Assembly: GCF_902459465.1 (NCBI RefSeq)
Contig: NC_047080.1
Coordinates: forward strand, 6,820,001 to 6,884,000
Source: Asterias rubens
Taxonomy: Eukaryota
Direction: 5' to 3'
Length of the DNA: 64,000 nt
The notes below the pieces were generated by a model, which was not told the DNA's origin, ran no database searches, and saw only the letters and a list, made by a program, of their open reading frames with translations. How positions within the stretch are numbered: position 1 is the first letter of the stretch; the number at the start of each line of letters is the position of its first letter. A program made the translations under genes and the position numbers. Positions 1 to 15,620 of this stretch are shown piece by piece.

Positions 1-95
1 AATCCATTTGAAAAAAACGGCACTAAATTAAAAATAAATAATAATAAAAGAAATGTTTGTCCCTTAAAAATAATTAAACGAAATGTTTTTAAAAC

Positions 96-1140
96 TACGG
101 AAGCTTAAAGTGACCTTCCGAGTTGCCGCGTGTCCGAGTTATTTTATCAGGAAAAGACGGAATACCGTGATATTTCAGACGTGTTCCGAGTTAGTACCTC
201 TCAGAAAGACGTCTTTCCCCGATACCGTATCTCAGAATGACGCCTTTCCCTGATACCGTATCTCAGAAAGACGTCTTTCCCTGATACCGTATCTATGAAA
301 GACGTCTTTCCCTGATATCGCATCTATGAAAGACGTCTTTCCTTGATATCGTATCTATGAAAGACGTCTTTCCCTGATACCGTATCTATGAAATCCGTCT
401 TTCCCTGAAACCGTATCTCAGAAAGACGTCTTTTCCTGATACCGTAGAACGGAAAGACGTCTTTCCAGGAAAACGTATTACGGAAAGACGTCTTTCACCG
501 ATACCATTATCTCAAAAAGACGTCTTTCCCTGACACTGTATCTCAGAAATCCGTCTTTCCCTAAAAACGTGTCTCAAAAAGACGACTTTCCTTGATACCG
601 TATCTCAGAAAGACGTCTTTCCCTGATACCATATCTCGGAAAGACGTCTTTCCCTGAAACCGTATTACGGAAAGACGTCTTTCCCTGAAACCGTATCTCA
701 GAAAGACGTCTTTCCCTGAAACCGTTTTACGGAAAGACGTCTTTCCCTGATACCGTATTACGGAAAGACGTCTTTACCCGATACCGTATCTCAGAAAGAC
801 GACTTTCCCTGATACCGTATCTCGGAAAGACGTCTTTCCCTGAAACCGTATAACGGAAAGACGTCATGCCCTGCCGTATCTCAGAAATCCGTCTTTTCCT
901 GATACCGTATTTCAGAAAGACGTCTTTCCCTGATACCGTATCTATGAAAGACACCTTTCTCTAATACCGTATCTCAGAAAGACGTCTTTCCCTGATACCG
1001 TATAACGGAAAGACGTCTTCCCCTGAAACCGTATCTCAGAAAGACGTCTTTCCCTGATACCGTATCTATGAAAGACACCTTTCTCTAATACCGTATCTCA
1101 GAAAGACGTCTTTCCCGATACCTTATCTTTGAAAGACGTC
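96..1140 (+). repeat. Left TIR: about 107-bp unique tip plus about 30 copies of a 31-bp unit (AGAAAGACGTCTTTCCCTGATACCGTATCTC)
   Basis: Period 31 measured directly (e.g. TGATACCGT at 251 and 282). Each unit holds the 14-bp palindrome GAAAGACGTCTTTC. Confidence 0.95.
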
Positions 1141-1464
1141 TCTCTAAGATATATTAGCCACGTTGAACTCATATTTAATCGTAACTGTGATCATAGTCAA
1201 GAACCCACCATTTCGGAGTCTCTATACCTCCTTCAGAGTCGTCATTCCAATTGGTAAGTACGCTGAAATAACATTTAATCATATTATTTCGGAAATGTTT
1301 GATTTAAAACCCCATTGCCAACAATCCCAAGTTAAAATTACATGTCAAGCAACAGTTGATCAAGGTTAAGTTATATATTACTATGGTATTTTACAATATA
1401 TGCTAGAACCTTTCATGCTACTGGCAGAGAAAATGTTCAGGTTGTAGAATTCTTTTTCTTTTGT

Positions 1465-2718
1465 TTGAAGGTCGTTGTGATACTGCTCGTACAGGAGGTA
1501 CCTGCACCTCGAAATCGTGGCGACATCATCGCACGGGGTCTCAACAGAGAGCAACTCATAGCACTCTATTTTCAAAGCGGTTACACAGCATTACAAATTT
1601 GCTCTGTCTTGGCTCTTCATCACCAGATTTGTCTAAGCATCCGGCATTTGCGCAGGTTACTATGGTCTATGGGACTGCGGATACACAGCCAACATGCTCC
1701 CGCCCATGAACTAGTTGCTGCTTTGAGAAATGAGCTGAGAGGCAGCGGTAGGTTACTTGGTTATCGCCTGATGTGGCATAGACTCAATTATCACTATGGT
1801 CTCCGGGTGTCTCAGAACATCACAAGACAACTTCTTGGCATTCTCGACCCCGAAGGAGTTCGGATGAGATCACGTGGGCGACTTTTGAGGAGACAATATT
1901 TTTGTAGTGGGCCAAATCATATTTGGCACATTGATGGTTATGACAAACTGAAACAATTTGGATTCGCAATACATGGTGCCATCGATGGCTTCTCGCGCAA
2001 GGTCCTGTGGCTCTACGTCGGTCCGAGCAACAACAACCCACAATACATAGCTGGATTCTTTTTGGAGCAGGTGAAACGTGCAAGGGGCGTGCCGACAATA
2101 CTGAGGTGTGATCGAGGGACCGAAAACAGCATTGTCCGAACACTGCAGATAGCGCTTCGAACAGGTCATGACGATGAGTTATCAGGATTGCAAAGTTTCA
2201 TGTACGGCCGATCTACCAGCAACCAACGAATAGAGTGTTTCTGGGCTCAACTAAGACGTATGCTGGTACATTTCTGGATCAACTTTTTTAGAGATATGAG
2301 GGACAGAGGAATATTTGACAATACGAATGTAATACACATCGAAAGTGTACGGTTTTGCTTTACCTCACTACTGCAAAACGAACTAAACCAAGCGGTGTAC
2401 TTATGGAACAATCATTCTATTCGGCGTCAGAACTTCCACAATGAGTGTCCATCCGGTAAACCAAACTTACTGTACCACACACCCGAAATATTTGGGATGA
2501 CTGATCGACTGAAGCCTTTGTTGCATAGTTTAGATGAAATAAATGTAGTTGAAGCTCAGTACTCTAGAAGGTATCCTCAATACGGATGCAGTGAGCAGTT
2601 TGTACAAGTTATTACAGAAATAGTAGGACAGAACATTGACAATTTTGAAATGCCCACTACCGCTGACGAAGCACTGGCGTTGTACACAAGAGTTTTGGCG
2701 ATCATCGATATGATTTAA
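1465..2718 (+). CDS. DDE transposase (integrase-core/IS3-like), uninterrupted 417-codon frame; true start probably in an upstream exon
   Basis: N-terminal HTH-like segment (LIALYFQSGYTALQICSVL...SIRHLRRLL). Catalytic motifs WHIDGYDKL, HGAIDGFSRKVLW, LRCDRGTEN and SNQRIECFW, with 40 residues between the second D and the E. The frame opens on TTG right at a polypyrimidine-AG acceptor-like site (TTCTTTTTCTTTTGTTTGAAG). Confidence 0.9.
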   Translation: MKVVVILLVQEVPAPRNRGDIIARGLNREQLIALYFQSGYTALQICSVLALHHQICLSIRHLRRLLWSMGLRIHSQHAPAHELVAALRNELRGSGRLLGYRLMWHRLNYHYGLRVSQNITRQLLGILDPEGVRMRSRGRLLRRQYFCSGPNHIWHIDGYDKLKQFGFAIHGAIDGFSRKVLWLYVGPSNNNPQYIAGFFLEQVKRARGVPTILRCDRGTENSIVRTLQIALRTGHDDELSGLQSFMYGRSTSNQRIECFWAQLRRMLVHFWINFFRDMRDRGIFDNTNVIHIESVRFCFTSLLQNELNQAVYLWNNHSIRRQNFHNECPSGKPNLLYHTPEIFGMTDRLKPLLHSLDEINVVEAQYSRRYPQYGCSEQFVQVITEIVGQNIDNFEMPTTADEALALYTRVLAIIDMI

Positions 2719-3779
2719 ATATTTTGTAAACATTAACAGCAAGGAAACTCAACAAAATGGAACTATTTTTAAAACTTTAAAGCCGAAACAGAGCTTGCCC
2801 TTTTTAGTTTCATTTATTTAATTGTTTATGTAAATTTTGTGTGAAGAGAGTTTGCAAGTTTGAAGCCAGAAAAGGACGCAGTCCAGCTTGCTTTCATTTA
2901 TTAACTGCATGGTTTCTACATGTTGTGCTTTTATTGGCTTAAATTCATGCAGGTGTACAATATAGAAGTGTTATTTATGGGAAAGTTAGAACGGAGCCGT
3001 ACCACTCATTGAGTTAGCAAAGTAAATTGTTCTCGCAATGTTGACTTGTTTCATCGCTTCAGTCGACTCACAAACAATAAGTCGACTTACTGACATAATT
3101 TATCTCGTTTGGGGAGGGATCATAATCGTAGCATTGGCAAGTCAAGCGACGTCGAGCAGTGTTCAGGGACTCCACGATTAACAGTCGTCATCACCGATTC
3201 CCTTGATTTTTCTCCATCATTATTAATAAACACCTAAAACTGTCAACCAAGTCGGGCCGTTTAATACATTGTTGAGTTAGTTCGTTTAGCCAAAGTTGTT
3301 AATTGTGCGCAACTTACATGTTAAGAAAACAAATAAATATTCCGCTCTTACTTTGACCTGTGAATTTAGTGACTCCCTTTCCTGTGTTTCGTTTCTCAAT
3401 ATCAATCTTGATTGCTAAGCAAAGTGCGACATACAAAACTCAAGAACATGTGCTTTGTGCGGTAGATGTTAGTTTCCAAACGCCAGGAGTCGATCGTTAC
3501 ACGTGAAAAGGATCCGAAATAACCACACTGGTAAGAACGCTTTTAGACTTGACCAAGTCCGTCCAGAATTTGTCTTGTTGCGAGTCGATCGGACCCACTG
3601 CAGGGGTACATACGTATCACTCTCCACGTTGCAAAACTTCTCAACACGAACGTACGTTATCATTCAAGTTAAGGCCAATCAAAGACTGGTCTATTCCCTT
3701 TCAGTACACAAGAGATTCATCTAGTTCTGCTGATTTTATTATATTTTTATGAAGCTGTCTGGTATTTATTTCAGATTTT

Positions 3780-6625
3780 TAAATATTTAAGACCGAGAGT
3801 CCCCCCTAAAATTGCTTCATATACTGTGACAAGTCACTGTGCCGTGCGTACAGTTTAAGATTTCATTTTATCATAATTTGATAAAGCTCCATGTATTTAT
3901 TTTAGATTATTGAAAATTAAAGAGCACGCGAGTCCGTTTGCAGCATAGGCTACTGTGCGTGTGTAAACAACGTACACCGCTGTGTGCACAGTTTACGATT
4001 TCATCAACGCCACGGGTCGATTTGTAAAACGGTTTATCAATACGGTATTATTCAAATTAGACCAATCAAAGACTGGCATTACCTAAACAAAGCATTCATG
4101 TAGCATTACTGATTTTATCATAATTCTAAAAAGCTCCGCTATATTGATTTCAGATTTTTGAAAATTACACACCACGAGTCCCTTTGCAGCATACTGTGCG
4201 CGTGTACTGGGTACTTCACTACTGTGCGCACAGTTTAAGATTTCATCAACGCCACGGGTCGATTTGTAAAACAGTTTATAAACACGTTATCATTTAAACG
4301 AAGCCAATCAAAGACTGTCATTACCTATACAAAGCATTCATGTAGCATTACTGATTTTATCATAATTTTATAAAGCTCCGTTATATTGATTTCAGATTTT
4401 TTGAAAATTACACACCACGAGTCCCTTTGCAGCATACTTTGTATGTGTAAATCACTGCTGTGCGTACAGTTTCAGATTTCATCAACGCCACGGGTCGATT
4501 TGTAAAACAGTTTATCAACACGTTATCATTCAAACGAAGCCAATCAAAGACTGTCATTACCTAAACAAAGCATTCATGTAGCATTACTGATTTTATCATA
4601 ATTTTATAAAGCTCCGTTATATTTATTTCAGATTTCTGAAAATTACACACTACGAGTCCCTTTGCAGCATACTGTGCGCGTGTACTACACTGCTGTGCGC
4701 ACAGTTTTAAATTTCATCAACGCCACGGGTCGATTTGTAAAACGGTTTATCAATACGTTATCATTCGAACGAAGCCAATCAAAGACTGTCATTACCTAAA
4801 CAAAGCATTCATGTAGCATTACTGATTTTATCATAATTTTATAAAGCTCCGTTATATTTATTTCAGATTTCTGAAAATTACACACTACGAGTCCCTTTGC
4901 AGCATACTGTGCGCGTGTACTACACTGCTGTGCGCACAGTTTTAAATTTCATCAACGCCACGGGTCGATTTGTAAAACAGTTTATCAACATGTTATCATT
5001 TAAACGAAGCCAATCCAAGACGGTCATTACCTAACCAAAGCATTCATGTAGCATTACTGATTTTATCATAATTTTATAAAGCTCCGTTATATTGATTTCA
5101 GATTTTTGAAAATTACTCACCACGAGTCCCTTTGCAGCATAGTTTGCATGTGTACACATCGCTGCTGTGCGTACAGTTAACGATTTCATCAACGCCACGG
5201 GTCGGTTTGTAAAACGGTTTATCAATACGTTTTTATTCAAACAAAGCCAATCAATGACTGCCATTACCTAAACAAAGCATTCATGTAGCATTACTGTTTT
5301 TATCATAATTTTATAAAGCTCCGTTATATTTATTTCAGAGTTTTGAAAATTACACACGACGAGTCCCTTTGCAGCATACTGTGCGCGTGTACTACACTGC
5401 TGTGCGCACAGTTTAAGATTTCATCAACGCCACGGGTCGATTTGTAAAACAGTTTATCAATACGGTATCATTCAAATTATGCAAAACAAAGACTGTCATT
5501 AACCAAACAAAGGATTCATGTAGCATTACTGATTTTATCATAATTTTATGCAGCTCCGTCATATTTATTTCCGATTTTTGAAAATTACACACCACGAGTC
5601 CCTTTGCAGCATACTGTGCGCGTGTACTACACTAACACTGCTATGCGTACAGTTAACGATTTCATCAACGCCACGGGTCGATTTGTAAATCGGTGTATCA
5701 ATTCGGTATCATTCAAATTAGACCAATCAAAGACTCTCATTACCTAAACAAAGCATTCATGTAGCATTACTGATTTTATCATATTTTTATAAACCTCCAT
5801 TATATTTGTTTCAGATTTTTGAAAACGACACACAACGAGTCCCTTTGCAGCATACTGTGCGTGTGTACAACACTGCTGTGCGTCAATTTACAATTGCATC
5901 AACGCCACGGGTCGATTTGTAAAACAGTTTATCAACATGTTATCATTTAAACGAAGCCAATCCAAGACGGTCATTACCTAAACAAAGCATTCATGTAGCA
6001 TTACTGATTTTATCATAGTTTTATAAAGCTCCGTTACATTTATTTCAGATTTTTGAAAATTACACACCACGAGTCCCTTTGCAGCATACTGTGCGCGTGT
6101 ACTGGGTACTTCACTACTGTGCGCACAGTTTAAGATTTCATCAACGCCACGGGTCGATTTGTAAAACAGTTTATAAACACGTTATCATTCAAACGAAGCC
6201 AATCAAAGACTGTCATTACCTATACAAAGCATTCATGTAGCATTACTGATTTTATCATAATTTTATGCAGCTCCGTCATATTTATTTCCGATTTTTGAAA
6301 ATTACACACCACGAGTCCCTTTGCAGCATACTGTGCGCGTGTACTACACTAACACTGCTATGCGTACAGTTTACGATTTCATCAACGCCACGGGCCGATT
6401 TGAAAAATCGATTTATCAACACAGTACTTTTCAAACGAAGCCAATCAAATACTTTCATTCCCTTAACAAAGTATTCATGTAGCATTACTGATTTTATCAT
6501 GTTTTTGTAAAGCTTCATTATATTTATGTCAGATTTTTGAAAATTAAAGACCACGAGTCCCTTTGCAGCGTATTGTGCGTGTGTACAACACTGCTGTGCG
6601 CACAGTTTAAGATTTCACCAACGAT
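3780..6625 (+). repeat. Tandem satellite array, about 12 units of about 237 bp
   Basis: Anchor CATCAACGCCACGGGTCGATTTGTAAA recurs at about 4002, 4244, 4480, 4715, 4950, 5187, 5422, 5663, 5897, 6139, 6380 and partially at 6616. Confidence 0.95.
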
Positions 6626-8289
6626 TTGTGGAACAGTTTATCGAAAGGACCCGCCCTTTGATGGTCGTTCGCTGATCGTCCTACAACTTACACGAATGTA
6701 GAAAACGATTGCTGGTGATGGACTGGAAGCAATGGTTTGCATGTATTCAATTCCAAATAATATGAAACAAACAACTTAACTTACATCTAAACTGAAGACA
6801 CGCCGTTTTGTTTCTCTTGTGAATGGGAGTAAGACAACATTTATTGAATTTAGCAAAACGAGTATAATGACGTTTAAGAACAATCTGTTAATATAAAACA
6901 ATAAAAGCAGTGAAAAGAGTTAACAACTGTTTTAAGCATTTGCAAGTTTCGACGAGTAACAAATATAATGGCAAGTTAATCCATTAATTTTGTTATGTGC
7001 ATGGTGTTTATACTCGTTAAGTTCACCACTCAAAAACTTAACAATTCATCCATTAGAGATAGCATTCAAGTTCGCTGGAGTTTCTTGAAGGGTGTGTCTT
7101 TTCATTTAAACTCATTTTTGGCCACTCATTTTTTGGATTGTGCAATGTAAAACATAACACTTGGTTAAAAAGTTGCTTCCTTTATTATTTAGGTTTTTTG
7201 GTCAAATTTTGCAAATGAGCAGTCAATTTTATTTTCATGCGTTCGAATTCAAGCTGTTTTGCCTCTCCAGTTGTTACTGCGTTTCAAATTCAAAATTCGG
7301 CCATTCAATTTTGTTTTGAGTCGAGTCAAATTCCTGTAGCACTCTGTTCAATGTAGCGTACCGTCATTCTTGTTCGTGACACAACCGCCTCAAGAAGCGT
7401 CTGCGAATTTGAATGCTGCTTTGATGAATTTTAAATTGAATGATTATTTTGTTAAATCGAATGCAACATTACCATTAGGCCAAAAATTACAGTTGAACAA
7501 CATTTGCCAAGATACCTGTCGCACAATTTTTGTTTTTTAGGTAAGTCTTGGTCATTTTCCATTACATACACCTCCCCCCCCCCCCCCCCCACCAACCCCC
7601 AAAATAAATACAAAATGAATGAATAAATATAGGATGGATTCTCCATTTCAAAAGGTTGCGCTCGATCTAAAATTGAATGCAGTACCTACCGTACCTACCA
7701 GTACTCGGAAAATGAGTAAATGACGCTGTCAAATTTGCTGCATTGTCTCCACGGTTATTATTAGACCGTGGGATTCATCATCAAAAAGGGCGCTAGTTTT
7801 CGAGTTATCTGCAACTACCTAAACTTTTCCCCCAGATTTACTTATGGTAGACTTTCATAAAATGTTAAAGTTGTCAAGGGTAAAACTTGCACAGTAATGA
7901 GTTGTTTTAGTTAGAAATTAATTACAAGAAAAAAGCGCCCTCTGTGGTCGAAACTGGAGAACGGTGCTCAAACTGTATGGGCAAATCAATACGGCACAAA
8001 CGAATTGGGAAGTTACCGGATAATTTATTTTAGTGTCCTTTACAGGTTAACAGCTTTTTCCCCCATAGTGTTTTTCAATTGTTTGAATTACTGTCACCCA
8101 CAAACAGGCTTTAATTAAATCTAAATTAAATAGATAACTTGAAAGGAAATAGAAGGATATTGTATATACAAGAGATACACATTTTTATTTTCTCACCATT
8201 TTTTTGTGTATTTCTTTCTTCTCTTCAGATGCCACATTTGTGGTATAAAAATCATAAATAAATCTGACGGAGCGTTAAACGAAATACAT

Positions 8290-10095
8290 TATAAAATCAG
8301 TAATGCTACAAGATTGCTTTGTTAAGGTAATGGCAGTCTTTGATTGGCTTCGTTTGAACAATAACTGTTTTATCTATCGACCCGTGGCGTTGGTGAAATC
8401 TTAAACTGTACGCACAGCAGTGTGGTACACATACAAAGTATGCTGCAAAGGGACTCGTGGTGTGTAATTTTCAAAAATCTGAAATAAATATAACGGAGCT
8501 TTATAAAATTATGATTAAATCAGTATTGCTACATGAATGCTTTGTTTGAGTACTGGCAGTCTTTGATTGGCTTCGTTTGAACAATAACATGTTGATAAAC
8601 TGTTTTATAAATCGACCCGTGGCGTTGATGAAATCTTAAACTGTACGCACAGCAGTGTAGTACACATACAAAGTATGCTGCAAAGGGACTCGTGGTGTGT
8701 AATTTTCAAAAATCTGAAATAAATATAACGGAGCTTTATAAAATTATGATTAAATCAGTATTGCTACATGAATGCTTTGTTTGAGTACTGGCAGTCTTGG
8801 ATTGGCTTCGTTTGAATGATAACGTATTGATAAACCGATTTACATATCGACCCGTGGCGTTGATGAAATTGTAAATTGACGCACAGCAGTGATGTACACC
8901 ATAAAGTATGCTGCAAAGGGACTCGTGGTGTGTAATTTTCGAAAAACTGAAATAAATATAACGGAGCTTTATAAAATTATGATAAAATCAGTAATGCTAC
9001 ATGAATGCTTTTTATAGGGAATGACAGTCTTTGATTGGCTTCGTTTGAATGATAACGTATTGATAAAGCGTTTTACAAATCGACCCGTGGCGTTGATGAA
9101 ATTGTAAACTGTACGCACAGCAGTGTTGTACACACGCACAGTATGCTGCAAAGGGACTCGTTGTGTGTAGTTTTCAAAAATCTGAAACAAATATAATGGA
9201 GGTTTATAAAAAATATGATAAAATCAGTAATGCTACATGAATGCTTTGTTTAGGTAATGAGAGTCTTTGATTGGTCTAATTTGAATGATACCGAATTGAT
9301 ACACCGATTTACAAATCGACCCGTGGCGTTGAAATCTTAAACTGTACGCACAGCAGTGTAGTACACATACAGAGTATGCTGCAAAGGGACTCGTGGTGTG
9401 TAATTTTCAAAAATCTGAAATAAATATAACGGAGCTTTATAAAATTATGATTAAATCAGTATGCTACATGAATGCTTTGTTTGAGTACTGGCAGTCTTGG
9501 ATTGGCTTCGTTTGAACAATAACATGTTGATAAACTGTTTTATAAATCGACCCGTGGCGTTGATGAAATCTTAAGCTGTACACACAGCAGTGTAGTACAC
9601 ATACAAAGTATGCTGCAAAGGGACTCGTGGTGTGTAATTTTCAAAAATCTGAAATAAACGGAGCTTTATAAAATTATGATTAAATCAGTAGTGCTACATG
9701 AATCCTTTGTTTGGTTAATGCCGGTCTTTGTTAGGCACAATTTGAATGATACCGTATTGATAAACTGTTTTACAAATCGACCCGTGGCGTTGATGAAATC
9801 TTAAACTGTGCGCACAGCGGTGTTGGATACACACGAACAGTAGCCTATGCTGCGACAGGACTCGCGTGGTCTTTAATTTTCAAAAATCTGAAATAAATAT
9901 AATGGAGCTTCATAAAATTATGATAAAATCAGTAATGCTACATGAATGCTTTGTTTAGGGACTGGCAGGCTTTGATTGGTTTCGTTTGAACAATAACGTG
10001 TTGATAAACTGTTTTTACAGATCGACCCGTGGCGTTGATGAAATCGTAAACTGATGCACACGCACAGTATGCTGCAAAGGGACTCGTGGTCTTAA
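8290..10095 (-). repeat. Same 237-bp satellite in inverted orientation, about 8 units
   Basis: CGACCCGTGGCGTTG recurs about every 235 bp from about 8378 to about 10023. It is the reverse complement of the 3780-6625 array. Confidence 0.95.
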
Positions 10096-12267
10096 ATTTT
10101 TTCAGTAAAGAATCCACATATTAAAAAAAAAAATTACACCCTAAATAAAAAATTAAAAATGAAGTCGTGTTTTTAGGGCACATGCAGTCTTTACATTTAC
10201 CAAACTCCTGGCACTGCAGCTTCTCCAGATTGTGAACTGTCCTTTTCTATGGCTAGCCTATAAACTGTATAGGCCTAGCTATACATAATTTTACAAAGAA
10301 TAGATTTAAATCATTCAAGGTTTGGAAATCGCTGGTGCCCGCCACCCTCGATTGTCGGACTGGACATTACACAAGAAGTTAAGGGATCCCGAGTCTTATG
10401 AGGGGTCCTTTCGGCGATGACTTGATACTTCAGCTTAGTGGCATAGTAAACTTTGTTCGTTTTTTATTTTTGTAACTTTTTAAAGGTAGTGTTGACTTGA
10501 AAGACATCTTACAATGCGTTATCAAAGTTCCCCGTGAGTTCAGAAAAAGTTGTCACGTTTGCGAGCCGCAAGCCCCCAAACCAAGTAACCGAGATTTTTA
10601 TCACCACTTAGTTTTAAGGTCATGACCCCTATGCCAAGATATAATATTCAGTCATTACATGCTAGAGGATGGTTGTTTGTGTGGGCCAGTTGGATTTATT
10701 TACAACCTGTTTAAGCTCTGGCGACTAAAGGGGTACACAAAGAGACCCTGACACAAGACACGGATCCCATTACTGCACTAAGCTATTGAGGCACCCTGGG
10801 GCTGCTGTCTTTCAATACTCTGAAGTGGTTATGGTCTGGCCAATGGGAGTCTACGGGCCTGTGTAGTACCGTAGACCAGGGGTGAGGATTACAGAATCTT
10901 GGCCTAATGTACCCATTGAAGAAAAACAAATATGACCGTATTTGGTAACATGTGGAGAATTTTACCACCCCTCGGTTCAAATCTATCCACGCATGACGTT
11001 CAAACAAAACAATAGGCCCTACACAGTCAAATTTGTTTGGAATTCAAAATATCAGGAAATATTAGTTTTTGACTGTGTAGGGTCTAAATTGTGTTTGAAT
11101 GTTATACGCGGATAGAATAGCATAACAATTGGGGGGGGGGGGGCTTTAAACGAAGCAATTTATCAGTTTACTTGCAACTATTGCGATCTCTTCTATAAAA
11201 AGTAGGCTTTCGCATAAGGATAAACGGCGCGCTTAAAACAGAAAATAGAACACGAAGAATAAGTCAAACGAATACCCAAAGCGATTTCAATGAACAACAA
11301 ACAAACAAGTCATCAAGAATTCCGGGTGCCTGAAGGTGCCTGTCTTTATTGTATGTCTCCCTTCATACATTTTTTTTACATTGACATGTTTCATTGCACA
11401 TAACAATATTGAACAATATCTACAGCGTGCACTTCTTTTACCGTTTTATCACTGACGACATTCACAACTTGCATAATACGTTCAGTTGGTTGGTTTAAAC
11501 AAACTTCTCATAAAATGTATTTAAACATCTGAGGAAAAATATAACTTTGTAAAAAAAGCAATTTTTTACTTTATAAGGTTAATACAAAAATATTCATAAT
11601 CTTACTAGATGGCTGTATTTCTTTGCATTAAAGTTGTGTTAACATGACTCCGGAAAAGATTTGCTCAGTTCAATTTGTTTCAATATTTCGTTAGAAACAA
11701 AATGGGCAATTACAACGAAAGTGGCATCTTATTCGATGTCGACACTTTTTCCACACATGTGCTGTTTCATCTCAACAGGAGGAATGGTTTAGGAGTCCCA
11801 TGGAATGACGCACTACAAAGCATCAGTATAATTCCCATTTTGTGAGTTACCGGTACTCTTGCCCATAATTGTGGTACGAACAGTCGAATAACGAGAGATC
11901 ACAACAATGAATGATAAATTTAGATCAGTAAATTGGAAAAACCACATTTTCACTTGCCAACTGCACTCCCGCTAAAATATTTGTTCAGATTCAAATATTT
12001 CTTCCCTTACCTTTTAGCCTAGTATAATTGTTATTTGTACACCGCAGTTTCTATTGTGTCCTATAATTAAAACTAGTATTGCTTTCCCTTAAGACAAAAT
12101 ACTACACACATTTTTTTTCTAAAATTAACAGCCAAAGACTATGACGTAAGCAAGTTACCTTTGATATCACATTTTTATAAATTTGCCACAAAGTCTGTAA
12201 AAAATAACTTGCATAACTCAGATATAGAAGAAAGAAACTTTAAACAAGAAACATGAAACATGAAACT

Positions 12268-13544
12268 GTATCAGGGAAAGACGTCTTTCGGAGATACGGT
12301 TTCGGGGGAAACGTCTTTCCGTTATACGGTATCAGGGAAAGACGTCTTTCTGAGATACGGTATTAGAGAAAGGTGTCTTTCATAGATACGGTATCAGGGA
12401 AAGACGTCTTTCTGAGATACGGTTTCGGGGGAAGACGTCTTTCCGTTATACGGTATCAGGGAAAGACGTCTTTCTGAGCTACGGTATTAGAGAAAGGTGT
12501 CTTTCATAGATACGGTATCAGGGAAAGACGTCTTTCTGAAATACGGTATCAGGGAAAGACGGATTTCTGAGATACGGTATCAGGGCATGACGTCTTTCCG
12601 TTATACGGTTTCAGGGAAAGACGTCTTTCCGAGATACGGTATCAGGGAAAGTCGTCTTTCTGAGATACGGTATCGGGTAAAGACGTCTTTCCGTAATACG
12701 GTGTCAGGGAAAGACGTCTTTCCGTAAAACGGTTTCAGGGAAAGACGTCTTTCTGAGATACGGTTTCAGGGAAAGACGTCTTTCCGAGATATGGTATCAG
12801 GGAAAGACGTCTTTCTGAGATACGGTATCAAGGAAAGTCGTCTTTTTGAGACACGTTTTTAGGGAAAGACGGATTTCTGAGATACAGTGTCAGGGAAAGA
12901 CGTCTTTCCGAGATACGGTATCAGGGAAAGTCGTCTTTCTGAGATACGGTATCGGGTAAAGACGTCTTTCCGTAATACGGTGTCAGGGAAAGACGTCTTT
13001 CCGTAAAACGGTTTCAGGGAAAGACGTCTTTCTGAGATACGGTTTCAGGGAAAGACGTCTTTCCGAGATATGGTATCAGGGAAAGACGTCTTTCTGAGAT
13101 ACGGTATCAAGGAAAGTCGTCTTTTTGAGACACGTTTTTAGGGAAAGACGGATTTCTGAGATACAGTGTCAGGGAAAGACGTCTTTTTGAGATAATGGTA
13201 TCGGTGAAACACGTCTTTCCGTAATACGTTTTCCTGGAAAGACGTCTTTCCGTTCTACGGTATCAGGGAAAGACGTCTTTCTGAGATACGGTTTCAAGGA
13301 AAGACGGATTTCATAGATACGGTATCAGGGAAAGACGTCTTTCATAGATACGGTATCAGGGAAAGACGTCTTTCTGAGATACGGTATCAGGGAAAGACGT
13401 CTTTCTGAGATACGGTATCAGGGAAAGACGTCTTTCTGTTTGATACTTACTCGGAACACGTCTGAATTATCACGGTATTCCGTCTTTTCCTGATAAAATA
13501 TCTCGGAAACGTGGCAACTCGGAAGGTCACTTTAAGCTTCCGTA
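12268..13544 (-). repeat. Right TIR: inverted 31-bp unit array (about 38 copies) plus tip
   Basis: Reverse complement of the left arm, with the same variant units in mirror order. Carries an extra 279-bp (9-unit) duplication (12631 vs 12910). Confidence 0.95.
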
Positions 13545-13550
13545 TAAAAC

Positions 13551-15620
13551 CAACAAGAAAAAAAAACTATCAAAAAAAAATAATCCATTAGAAAAAGAAT
13601 TCACAAAAAAAAAAAAAAAAAATTAATAATAAAAATTGTTTGCCCTGATAAATAATAACACGAAATGTTTTAAATTAAAATTAAAAAAAAATTACACTTT
13701 ATATATATTTTTTTATTAATTCTTACTTAAAAACCACAAACGTAAACTAAAATTGCACAGAGACAATATTGTGTAAAGGACAAATTTTGTAAAGGACACA
13801 TTTTTTAAAGGACAAATTTCAGAATCAATGAACACAAGTTTTTACTAACTGACCATAAATGAACATAGAGGGCGCGCATGATGGCGAGTCGCGATTTTTT
13901 TTCTTTTTATAGGCCAAGATTTTCCCATTGGCTGCAAAAAGCGCAAGACGGCATCTTTCATCGTACATCACTTCTCGCCGGGCCAGTGTTCCCCTATTAT
14001 TAGAGCTATAATTTGCTCTATGGTCTCAGATGCTGGCCATGCAATTGCAAGACGACTTAAAAGTAAAAAAATAATGTTGTACGTGGTGTGTATAAGACCA
14101 TATTGAGCAAGCAGCTGAAAGCTGGCCTACTCCGACTGGTGGCTTACGATCAGGAATAACATGGAAATAAAATAAAATCAGTGATACAGTTTGCTCTGAT
14201 TACCAAATGAAAAGAAATTGTGGACTTATGGCTGGTGCCCGACTAAATTTGTTGATAGTGAGGAAATTTTGTTAGCAGTATGATTTGGTAAACAAATGAA
14301 ACTGGTGGGCCCTGTTAATATTCACAGTGAAAGATTTTTTAATCTTTGGGGAAGGGAATCTTGAGGTATTCGAAAGTGTCCTTAAACCTTTGTGAGATCG
14401 GTTTTGAAACGTAAGTGATGCTGCAACTCTTGAAACGTGAGCCTATCGACTCGGGATTGAAAGCGTACCTTTTGATGTTGTAACTTGGAACCTAAATGTG
14501 TCTTGGAATGTAAAGAGTAGCTGCGTGCTTGGAACGTAACCAATCTTTTGGAACGCTACGAGCAATTTACATATTTCATGGGAAGGGTCTATTCCCTGTT
14601 TCCACAAGCGTCGATACGCACAGTAAATTACAGACCCATGAATTGGGGGCTCCAGTGCAGGCTGTGTACTTAAAACAAACTTAAAAAAAGAATTCCCGAA
14701 TTTACAAGAGCTTTTCTTTCTTCAAGTAGCACACACATGATCAGCCATGAAACACAGGTTTTTATCAATGATAGTACGATCTTTGGTTTTTATTGCACCA
14801 CCATGCACGGACTGTACATGGAGCTGAGGTATGGACTGTACATTGAACATGTACACCGACCCATTACGGCTCCATGAAATCACATGTTTCAACCCGTAGA
14901 GCTATTCTAATAACATGATAATAGCTTTATTAATAGGGGAACACTGACCCGGCGAGAAGTGATATACGATGAATGATGCTGTCTTGCAGCCAATGGGAAA
15001 ATCTTGGACAAAGTCTTGGCCTTAAAATCCACTGGGAAAAGAAACTCGCGATTCGCCATTATGTGCGCCCTCTATGTTCATTTATGGTCAGTTCGTAAAA
15101 ACTTTTGTTCGTTGATTCTAGAAATTTGTCCTTTACAAAATTTGTCCTTTACACATTATTTGTCTTTAGTTTGACGCCCTCAATGTTTGTTTCGCTTTTT
15201 TGTTTTAACGTAGCTTGTGCAATTTTAGTTTACGTTGGTGGTTTTTAGGTAAGAATTAATAAAAATATGTATATAAAGTGTAATTTTTTTTAAGGATAAT
15301 TTTTTAATTTTTTATTTAAAAACATTTTTTATTGTTACCTTTTTTTAATTTGGTTATTTTTTTTCTAATGGATTATTTTTTTGATAGTTTTTTTCTTAAT
15401 AATTTTAAAAACATTTCGTGTAATTATTTTTAAGGGACAAACATTTCTTTTAATATTAATTTTTTTAATTATTTATTGTAATTTTTTTCTAATGGATTAT
15501 TTTTTGGGAAGTTTTCTTTTATTGTTTATTTAAAAACATTTTCGTGTATTTTTTTTAAAGGGACAAACATTTTTTTATCATAACCTTTTTTTTAATTTAG
15601 TGTAATTTTTTCTAGTGGAT
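13551..15620. repeat. Inverted-repeat (foldback-like) element that is the target of the IS3EU-like insertion; left arm continues in 1-89
   Basis: 13680-14020 is the reverse complement of about 14910-15290 (e.g. AGTGTTCCCCTATTA vs TAATAGGGGAACACT). AT-rich approximately 110-bp units at 1-95 and 13551-13680 mirror 15300-15620. The spacer is about 0.9 kb. Confidence 0.7.

What the first reader, a model, noticed from the sequence alone, without database searches (positions are those of the whole stretch)
96..13544. Giant, apparently intact IS3EU-like transposon with kilobase satellite-built TIRs
Seen: exact terminal inversion, a 6-bp TSD, an uninterrupted DDE frame, and TIRs of about 1.0 and 1.3 kb made of a 31-bp unit. 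Known: IS3EU is a poorly characterised eukaryotic IS3-related superfamily, documented mainly in Repbase (recollection). Inference: at 13.4 kb with a foldback-type architecture, this may be a young, possibly active, undescribed family in which the transposase recognises tandem palindromic sites.
Basis: partly seen in the sequence, partly recalled or inferred. Interest (0 to 1): 0.8.

Follow-up and report, generated by a model that had tools for sequence, protein, structure and literature searches.

The report
IS3EU transposon copy with nested foldback
This is a real, very young IS3EU-type DNA transposon, but it reaches 13.4 kb only because a second, unrelated transposon sits inside it, and this copy has lost its start codon, while three 7-kb sister copies look intact and the family is transcribed and spliced.

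Summary
Window 96-13544 has exact 32-nt inverted tips (TA..TA), a 6-bp duplication TAAAAC on both sides, and arms of 1046 and 1277 bp made of a 31-bp near-palindromic unit. It also has an open DDE (rve-type) frame.

- **Size.** The genome holds four copies. The other three are 7.3-7.6 kb. Window 3461-10104 (6.6 kb, the inner inverted 235-bp satellite arms) is a copy of a separate dispersed element. That element has 9-bp duplications and its own termini elsewhere (Foldback/MULE-like). Here it replaces 550 bp of the canonical element and lacks its right end.
- **Coding state.** The transposase gene has two exons. A contig from a public run shows intron 1254-1470 spliced out, with the ATG in exon 1. 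This copy has a 12-bp deletion that removes that ATG. The three sisters keep it and encode 420 aa.
- **Family.** TA..TA termini, 6-bp duplications, an rve-type DDE core without an HHCC motif, and IS3 as the only bacterial match all fit IS3EU/GingerRoot.
- **Arrays.** The 31-bp period and its GAAAGACGTCTTTC core are shared by two sister families (62-72% transposase identity). This supports, but does not prove, a multi-site transposase-binding role.

Verdict: new member of a known kind, with moderate interest.

The parts
90..95 (.). left copy of the 6-bp target-site duplication TAAAAC
   Evidence: paralogous-unit alignment
96..198 (+). left terminal unique segment: 32-nt exact tip starting TA, and three TCCGAGTT-like direct repeats
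   Evidence: 96 of 103 nt identical to the right terminus
199..1141 (+). left arm array: about 31 units of the 31-bp near-palindrome GTATC-TCA-GAAAGAC|GTCTTTC-CCT-GATAC
   Evidence: core at least 90% conserved; spacing 31 bp in 27 of 30 intervals
1186..1253 (+). exon 1 of the transposase gene (5' end not mapped). This copy has a 12-bp deletion after 1244 that removes the ATG
   Evidence: spliced contig in run X8 and the 12-bp insertion in X4; alignment of the four copies
1254..1470 (+). intron, 217 nt, GT..AG
   Evidence: X8 contig 27 joins the end of exon 1 to 1470/1471
1471..2718 (+). exon 2: 415 codons plus a stop. N-terminal helical (HTH-like) region, rve-type DDE core (D155, D214, E255 in exon-2 numbering, R at E+7), C-terminal helical domain
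2719..3460 (+). internal non-coding region shared with the sister copies. It holds a short high-copy repeat near 3074-3165
   Evidence: depth spike
3461..10104 (+). nested, right-truncated copy of a separate Foldback/MULE-like non-autonomous element. Left terminus and unique 404 bp at 3461-3864; 235-bp satellite array at 3865-6623; centre at 6624-8362; inverted array at 8363-10060
10105..12267 (+). internal right region shared with the sister copies (3 mismatches in 2163 bp versus the C11 copy)
12268..13438 (-). right arm array: about 38 units of the 31-bp unit, including an 8-unit internal duplication
13439..13544 (-). right terminal unique segment ending in the exact 32-nt tip (..CCGTA)
13545..13550 (.). 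right copy of the duplication TAAAAC

Best explanation
Window 96-13544 is one of four genomic copies of a very young IS3EU/GingerRoot-type cut/copy DNA transposon. The native element is about 7.3-7.6 kb. It has TA..TA tips, a terminal unique segment of about 100 bp, and arms of 0.9-1.3 kb built from 28-41 phased 31-bp near-palindromic units. It carries a two-exon gene for a 420-aa DDE transposase and makes 6-bp target duplications.

This copy inserted into an AT-rich minisatellite. It then received an unrelated satellite-armed Foldback/MULE-like element at 3461. A one-sided deletion then removed that element's right end together with 550 bp of the host element. This copy also lost 12 bp of exon 1, including the start codon. 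It is therefore most likely a non-autonomous derivative with perfect ends, which the intact sister copies could still move in trans.

Shown: the anatomy, the copy comparison, the splice, the loss of the ATG, and the nested element's independent life elsewhere. Inferred: the order of events, mobilisation in trans, and the idea that the transposase's N-terminal helical domain binds the repeated palindromic units, which sit about three helical turns apart, to build the synaptic complex.
For: - Tips and duplication.
- Copies: four have an open exon 2 at 97-100% amino-acid identity. Perfect 6-bp duplications flank two of them, TAAAAC and CAAAAG; at the third (C11) CTTATG flanks a composite of a 548-bp MITE plus the copy, not the copy alone.
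- Colinearity: window 96-3460 and 10105-13544 align with the 7-kb copies. 3461-10104 replaces a 550-bp segment that the other three share at about 98%.
- Nested element: it occurs at 15 or more other loci at 98-100% identity. It has its own termini of about 40 bp and 9-bp duplications (CAAACAAAC, CTAACATAC), and its length varies from 5.3 to 10.4 kb. Only its left terminus is present in the window.
- Splice and ATG: a spliced contig puts the ATG in exon 1. The 12-bp deletion is in this copy only.
- Protein family: Pfam rva_4 at 1.4e-34. The only NCBIfam hit is the IS3 family transposase, at 5.7e-8. D, D and E are invariant across 30 homologues. The model has mean pLDDT 83, and its structural neighbours are TnsB, MuA, IstA and retroviral integrases.
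- Arrays: the 31-bp period and core are conserved in sister families B and C.
- Independent copy: a metagenome contig holds a canonical copy without the nested element.
- Literature: IS3EU termini are TA..TA and duplications are 6 bp (PMC10045372).
Against: - No read or contig independent of the assembly bridges 3460/3461, 10104/10105 or the 12-bp deletion at 1244. Short-read contigs break there.
- The kind of run X8 is not on record. Only the spliced joint shows that it contains RNA.
- The C19 copy has no recognisable duplication, and its right end is rearranged.
- Binding of the transposase to the 31-bp units is untested.
- No Repbase IS3EU sequence could be placed in a tree with this protein.
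Confidence: 0.8

Rival explanations
1. One reading: a single, intact, autonomous 13.4-kb element of a new family. On this view both the outer 31-bp arms and the inner 235-bp arms are native features.
For: The ends and duplication are perfect and exon 2 is open. The inner arrays are inverted like the outer ones.
Against: Three sister copies lack the inner 6.6 kb and carry 550 bp in its place. The inner part lives independently at 15 or more loci, with its own termini and 9-bp duplications. The ATG is deleted in this copy only.
Confidence: 0.04
2. The window copy is still autonomous. On this view the transposase is made from a non-AUG codon, from the internal in-frame ATG (residue 69 of the listed ORF), or from an unmapped upstream exon.
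For: Exon 2 is fully open, its catalytic residues are intact, and it differs from the C11 copy at only 3 amino-acid positions. The 5' end of the transcript is not mapped.
Against: No ATG lies between 1142 and the splice donor. The first ATG in exon 2 is out of frame. Starting at the in-frame one would remove about 70 residues, including the first predicted three-helix bundle. Homologues start at the position that exon 1 supplies.
Confidence: 0.1
3. The 31-bp arrays are not transposase-binding sites. On this view they act as a promoter or enhancer (ACGT-core palindromes directly upstream of exon 1), as a hairpin-forming target for silencing, or as a neutral satellite that expands by slippage.
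For: Exon 1 begins less than 50 bp after the array ends. The number of units varies freely between copies and arms, from 28 to 41. The core holds GACGTC, an ACGT-type palindrome (sequence).
Against: The arrays sit at both ends in mirror order, not only upstream of the gene. The period and core are kept in families whose transposases are only 62-72% identical, while the unit flanks differ. Short elements of 213-550 bp made of tips and units alone have duplications.
Confidence: 0.25
4. An assembly artefact: the long arms or the nested 6.6 kb are a mis-join of repeats.
For: The region is highly repetitive, and no independent contig bridges the junctions.
Against: The same arm architecture occurs in four copies on three chromosome-scale contigs and in an independent metagenome contig. 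The left junction falls exactly at base 1 of the nested element. Another run's contig also ends at that boundary (X8 record 31).
Confidence: 0.05

Closest known systems
[quoted passage not shown] 2019, PMC6839031)
   Same: TA..TA termini and 6-bp duplications. A DDE transposase of the rve type with no HHCC zinc motif and IS3 as its nearest bacterial family. The host range of the protein family (fish, cnidarians, molluscs, fungi, echinoderms). Sizes of 4-13 kb.
   Different: The inverted repeats described are 100-150 bp in GingerRoot and 36 bp in Styx. Here the arms are 0.9-1.3 kb and built from 28-41 phased 31-bp near-palindromes. Whether animal Repbase entries already show this could not be checked.
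Styx, an active IS3EU-related element of Zymoseptoria (PMC10853768)
   Same: 6-bp duplications, recent activity, solo ends, and copies clustered close together on a chromosome. Here two copies lie 509 bp apart.
   Different: Styx has 36-bp inverted repeats and four coding sequences. Here there is one two-exon gene and kilobase arms.
Bacterial IS3 family (NCBIfam NF033516)
   Same: A DDE core with a basic residue seven positions after E. It is the only bacterial family hit. Tip-to-tip junctions of ends recall the abutted-end junctions of IS3-family circles and dimers (my recollection).
   Different: The score of 32 bits is far below the family cut-off of 160. There is no OrfA/OrfB frameshift. 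The gene has an intron. The termini are TA rather than TG..CA. The duplication is 6 bp rather than 3-5 bp.
Foldback elements and MULE/MuDR-type non-autonomous elements (for the nested part, 3461-10104)
   Same: Long inverted arms made of tandem repeats around a unique centre, 9-bp duplications, and large length variation between copies.
   Different: No transposase was found in it, and its superfamily is inferred from duplication length alone. This copy lacks its right terminus.
Ginger1/Ginger2 and IS481EU
   Same: Integrase-like DDE transposons of eukaryotes.
   Different: Ginger has an HHCC motif and shorter duplications (recollection). IS481EU is found in parabasalids and makes duplications of about 4, 15 or 25 bp (PMC10045372). 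Neither fits here.

Membership tests
IS3EU/GingerRoot | termini 5'-TA..TA-3' (PMC10045372, PMC6839031) | tested here: met
   TACGG..CCGTA in all four copies and in sister families B and C
IS3EU/GingerRoot | target-site duplication usually 6 bp | tested here: met
   TAAAAC and CAAAAG flank two family-A copies; CTTATG flanks the C11 composite of MITE plus copy. Family C: GTTACG/GGTACG and a 7-bp case. A paralogous unit confirms the window's duplication. One copy (C19) has none.
IS3EU/GingerRoot | DDE transposase of the integrase type without an HHCC motif, first D 100-300 residues from the N-terminus | tested here: met
   Invariant D155, D214 and E255. No conserved H/C pattern lies upstream. The N-terminus is helical. 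Pfam rva_4.
IS3EU/GingerRoot | transposase clusters with Repbase IS3EU and GingerRoot sequences in a tree | not testable with these tools
   No Repbase or GingerRoot protein sequences are held here. Indirect support only: IS3 is the only bacterial family hit, and the rva_4 clusters come from the same host groups in which IS3EU/GingerRoot was reported.
Autonomous (self-sufficient) element | complete transposase reading frame with its start codon | tested here: not met
   The 12-bp deletion removes the exon-1 ATG in the window copy. The ATG is present in copies C11, C20-upstream and C19.
Ginger1/Ginger2 | N-terminal HHCC zinc-binding motif in the integrase | tested here: not met
   No such invariant columns in alignment A1. 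PMC10045372 states that IS3EU lacks it.
IS481EU | duplications of about 4, 15 or 25 bp; parabasalid hosts | tested here: not met
   The duplications are 6 bp. The nearest named homologues are echinoderm proteins.
Foldback/MULE-like (nested element only) | 9-bp target-site duplication and terminal inverted repeats | tested here: met
   Two other copies have 9-bp duplications and inverted termini of about 40 bp. The window copy has lost its right end.
Foldback/MULE-like (nested element only) | relation to a MuDR-type transposase | not tested
   No long ORF in the 1.74-kb centre. No autonomous partner was sought.

The most novel reading that the evidence does not exclude
The family is currently active in this animal, and its transposase assembles on dozens of phased 31-bp palindromic sites per arm. 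That would be a multi-site end-recognition mode not described for IS3EU. The elements also preferentially insert at or beside each other's termini, as IS911 and IS30 target their own inverted repeats. This would explain the tip-to-tip junctions at two loci and the two copies lying 509 bp apart.
Probability: 0.25. Interest if true: 0.6.

Novelty: new member of a known kind. Interest (0 to 1): 0.45.

Why it matters
IS3EU is among the least studied eukaryotic DNA transposon superfamilies, and no animal member has been worked out mechanistically. This genome offers a compact natural system for that work:
- three apparently intact copies that differ by no more than about 1.3% in substitutions;
- evidence of a spliced transcript;
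- a naturally defective copy with perfect ends;
- short end-only derivatives;
- two sister families that keep the same 31-bp period and palindromic core.

Together these make end recognition directly testable. For annotation, the lesson is practical. The 13.4-kb 'giant' should be split into two elements. The transposase gene model needs its upstream exon.

Tried and rejected
- Slicing the arrays at fixed 31-bp steps lost register and gave meaningless conservation. I replaced it with core-anchored extraction.
- Two anchor-based alignments failed on copy variants before a coordinate-based alignment worked.
- The sequence search of solved structures gave only a chance hit. The fold search was informative.
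- Contigs for homologues P0010 and P0065 could not be read.
- The flank of metagenome contig L062 has no match in this genome. I could not tell whether that copy is a polymorphic insertion or comes from another species.
- I looked for a duplication around the C19 copy and around the MITE-plus-element composite on C3. None was found.
- I looked for contigs bridging 3460/3461 in the window's configuration. None was listed.
- I considered that the similar left and right flanks meant a larger duplication. They are units of a host minisatellite.
- I considered a domesticated single-copy gene. Rejected: there are several copies, each with ends and duplications.
Full report
**Observation**

- The 32-nt tip TACGGAAGCTTAAAGTGACCTTCCGAGTTGCC stands at 96-127 and, inverted, at 13513-13544. 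Its first 14 nt occur nowhere else in the 64-kb window.
- TAAAAC flanks both ends (90-95 and 13545-13550).
- Tandem Repeats Finder gives 31-bp arrays at 199-1141 (30.5 copies) and 12268-13438 (37.8 copies). The arms are therefore 1046 and 1277 bp.
- The arrays are mirror-ordered: 264-873 against 12829-13438 is 610 nt at 92% complementarity. The right arm holds an extra 248-bp (8-unit) duplication.
- The first 103 nt of the two ends agree at 96 positions.
- The flanks resemble each other because the host site is an AT-rich tandem repeat of about 125 bp. A neighbouring unit aligns gap-free only if one TAAAAC is removed. This serves as a paralogous empty site and shows that the duplication is real.

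**The family**

The assembly is 417.6 Mb in 150 contigs, and the window is C20:6820001-6884000. It holds 14 tips within 3 mismatches and four copies whose exon 2 is open at 97-100% amino-acid identity.
- The copies are the window copy, C11:15061839-15068893, C19:1185494-1192812 and C20:6812171-6819587.
- The last of these ends only 509 bp upstream of the window copy.
- The three sisters are 7.3-7.6 kb.
- The duplications are TAAAAC, CAAAAG and, at C11, CTTATG around a composite of a short end-only element plus the copy. The C19 copy has a rearranged right end and no recognisable duplication.
- In the internal unique parts, the window copy differs from the C11 copy by 12 substitutions in 4482 bp and from the other two by about 1.2%. 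C20-upstream and C19 are 99.5% identical over 7 kb.
- Within-family codon changes run about 2 non-synonymous to 1 synonymous, as expected for copies drifting after insertion.

**Why this copy is 13.4 kb**

- Window 96-3460 and 10105-13544 align colinearly with all three sisters.
- Window 3461-10104 (6,644 bp) has no counterpart in them. It stands in place of a 550-bp segment that the three share at about 98%.
- That 6.6 kb holds the two inverted 235-bp satellite arrays (3865-6623 and 8363-10060) and a 1.74-kb centre.
- It is a copy of a separate dispersed element. Its first 404 bp, its satellite and its centre recur at 15 or more loci at 98-100% identity.
- The paired ends at those loci imply lengths of 5.3-10.4 kb.
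- Two other copies that I cut out have inverted termini of about 40 bp (GGTAGATGTTAG...) and 9-bp duplications, CAAACAAAC and CTAACATAC. This is the signature of Foldback/MULE-type elements. The superfamily is inferred from that alone.
- In the window the element starts exactly at its base 1 (3461), but its right terminus is absent.
- The simplest history (inferred) is insertion followed by a one-sided deletion. That deletion took the element's right end and 550 bp of the host element.
- No other IS3EU copy carries this junction, so the 13.4-kb form has not visibly transposed.

**The gene and its state**

Contigs from four public runs were laid on 1142-3900.
- One contig of run X8 joins '...CATTCATCATGTTTTTCCAATT' directly to 1470/1471. 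This shows a spliced intron at 1254-1470 (217 nt, GT..AG).
- The reading frame then starts ATG TTT TTC CAA TTG | GTC GTT..., giving a 420-aa protein that begins MFFQLVVV.
- This start matches the N-termini of the homologues.
- Longer X8 and X18 contigs cover most of exon 2 and the 3' region.
- The three sister copies carry the ATG. The window copy has a 12-bp deletion after 1244 that removes it.
- No other ATG lies between the array and the donor. The first ATG in exon 2 is out of frame. The first in-frame ATG would delete about 70 residues.
- The window copy is therefore probably unable to make a full transposase, although its catalytic residues are intact.
- I could not verify the 12-bp deletion in reads independent of the assembly, because no contig of run X1 crosses 1244.

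**The protein**

- Pfam gives rva_4 (integrase core) at 1.4e-34 and a weak rve match.
- The only NCBIfam hit is the IS3 family transposase, at 5.7e-8 and far below its cut-off.
- Across 30 homologues, D155, D214 and E255 (exon-2 numbering) are invariant, and an R sits seven residues after E.
- The AlphaFold model has mean pLDDT 83. It shows two small helical bundles, an RNase-H-like core and a helical C-terminal domain.
- Its structural neighbours are TnsB, MuA, IstA and retroviral integrases.
- Homologues number at least 606. The nearest named ones are echinoderm proteins (Holothuria 55%, Lytechinus 48%), followed by corals, an acorn worm, a brachiopod and a mussel.
- Atlas clusters of rva_4 come from chordates, cnidarians, molluscs and fungi. 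These are the groups in which IS3EU/GingerRoot was reported (PMC6839031, PMC11934779).

**Membership**

Kojima and Bao state that complete IS3EU families always have TA..TA termini and usually 6-bp duplications. They also state that IS3EU lacks the HHCC motif and that IS3EU and GingerRoot form one lineage (PMC10045372). All three sequence features are met here. A tree with Repbase sequences could not be built. The Ginger1/2 and IS481EU criteria are not met.

**The 31-bp unit**

- Anchored on its core, the consensus is GTATC-TCA-GAAAGAC|GTCTTTC-CCT-GATAC. This is a near-palindrome with an asymmetric inner triplet.
- The 14-bp core is at least 90% conserved, and the spacing is 31 bp in about 90% of intervals.
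- Unit numbers differ between copies and arms: 31/38, 41/30 and 32/28.
- Family B has 72% transposase identity and the core GAAAGACATCTTTC. Family C has 62% identity. Both keep the period and the core while the unit flanks differ.
- End-only derivatives of 213-550 bp, made of tips plus units, have duplications of their own.
- Thirty-one bp is close to three helical turns, which would place the sites on one face of the helix.
- I therefore favour repeated transposase-binding sites, at a probability of about 0.6. A promoter or enhancer role, or a silencing role, remains possible, because exon 1 starts just after the left array.

**Comparison and novelty**

- The inverted repeats described for GingerRoot (100-150 bp, PMC6839031) and Styx (36 bp, PMC10853768) are much shorter.
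- Satellite DNAs related to IS3EU entries are already noted in oyster and beetle (PMC8268682, PMC5844308).
- A Lytechinus homologue has about 1.7 kb of 53-bp arrays directly upstream of its gene.
- Arrays in IS3EU elements are therefore probably not new as such.
- I class this as a new member of a known kind.

The scan noted the inner arms (s1-150961) and the mirror order of the outer arrays (s1-151410) on this same stretch before. My tests show that the inner arms belong to a separate nested element, and they give an 8-unit expansion in the right arm.

**Verdict**

This is a real transposon of a young, transcribed IS3EU family. The copy in the window is a composite and probably a defective derivative, not a giant intact element.

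Noticed in passing
window 1-95 and 13545-13680; L017:8150-8396: The insertion site is an AT-rich tandem repeat of about 125 bp. A second full copy of the same transposon family ends only 509 bp upstream (C20:6819587).
   Followed up: partly
window about 7182-7472 (centre of the nested element): A segment of about 290 bp recurs at many dozens of loci at about 92% identity. It is probably a SINE or MITE nested inside the nested element.
   Followed up: no
window 3074-3165: Contig depth spikes about 30-fold in all four runs, with small palindromic joints (3106/3070). One run skips 2944-3154. This suggests a short high-copy repeat inside the canonical element.
   Followed up: no
L015:492-1041 and L021:499-1052: The same foldback MITE of about 550 bp (two tips plus 31-bp units) abuts tip-to-tip the left end of a full-length element at two loci, family A on C11 and family C on C3. 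At C11 the 6-bp duplication CTTATG flanks the composite. At C3 no duplication was found. This may reflect insertion targeted at ends, or mobilisation by hybrid ends.
   Followed up: partly
L016:7601-7813: In the C19 copy, a 29-nt fragment of a family-C tip follows the right tip. A second partial family-A right end of 184 bp comes after that. The terminus is rearranged and has no duplication.
   Followed up: partly
L062 (ENA ERZ1764465 k141_1586603), 5920-6422: An independent metagenome contig holds a canonical copy whose 503-bp right flank has no match in this genome. The flank begins TAGTAG, the same six bases that precede a solo left tip at C8:20711672 (L018:495-500). The copy may be a polymorphic insertion or may come from another species. 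Runs labelled with five organism codes hold near-identical sequence.
   Followed up: partly
alignment A1, columns 1-60: Most homologues, and the spliced product here (MFFQLVVVILLVQEVPAP), start with a hydrophobic stretch like a signal peptide, followed by a conserved AP..Y(T/S)(A/P)A motif. This is odd for a nuclear transposase and is unexplained.
   Followed up: no
L067:5984-7710 (Lytechinus pictus, GCA_037042905.1): A 48%-identical homologue has about 1.7 kb of 53-bp tandem arrays directly upstream of its gene, and the gene contains intron sequence. No inverted partner lies within 8 kb downstream.
   Followed up: partly
L071 (C37:217952-218164) and L072 (C149:11185-11397): A 213-bp family-C MITE has a 7-bp duplication, GGCCGGG. 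Over the 361 bp read from each (L071, L072), contig C149 is the reverse complement of contig C37, and is probably an uncollapsed haplotype.
   Followed up: no
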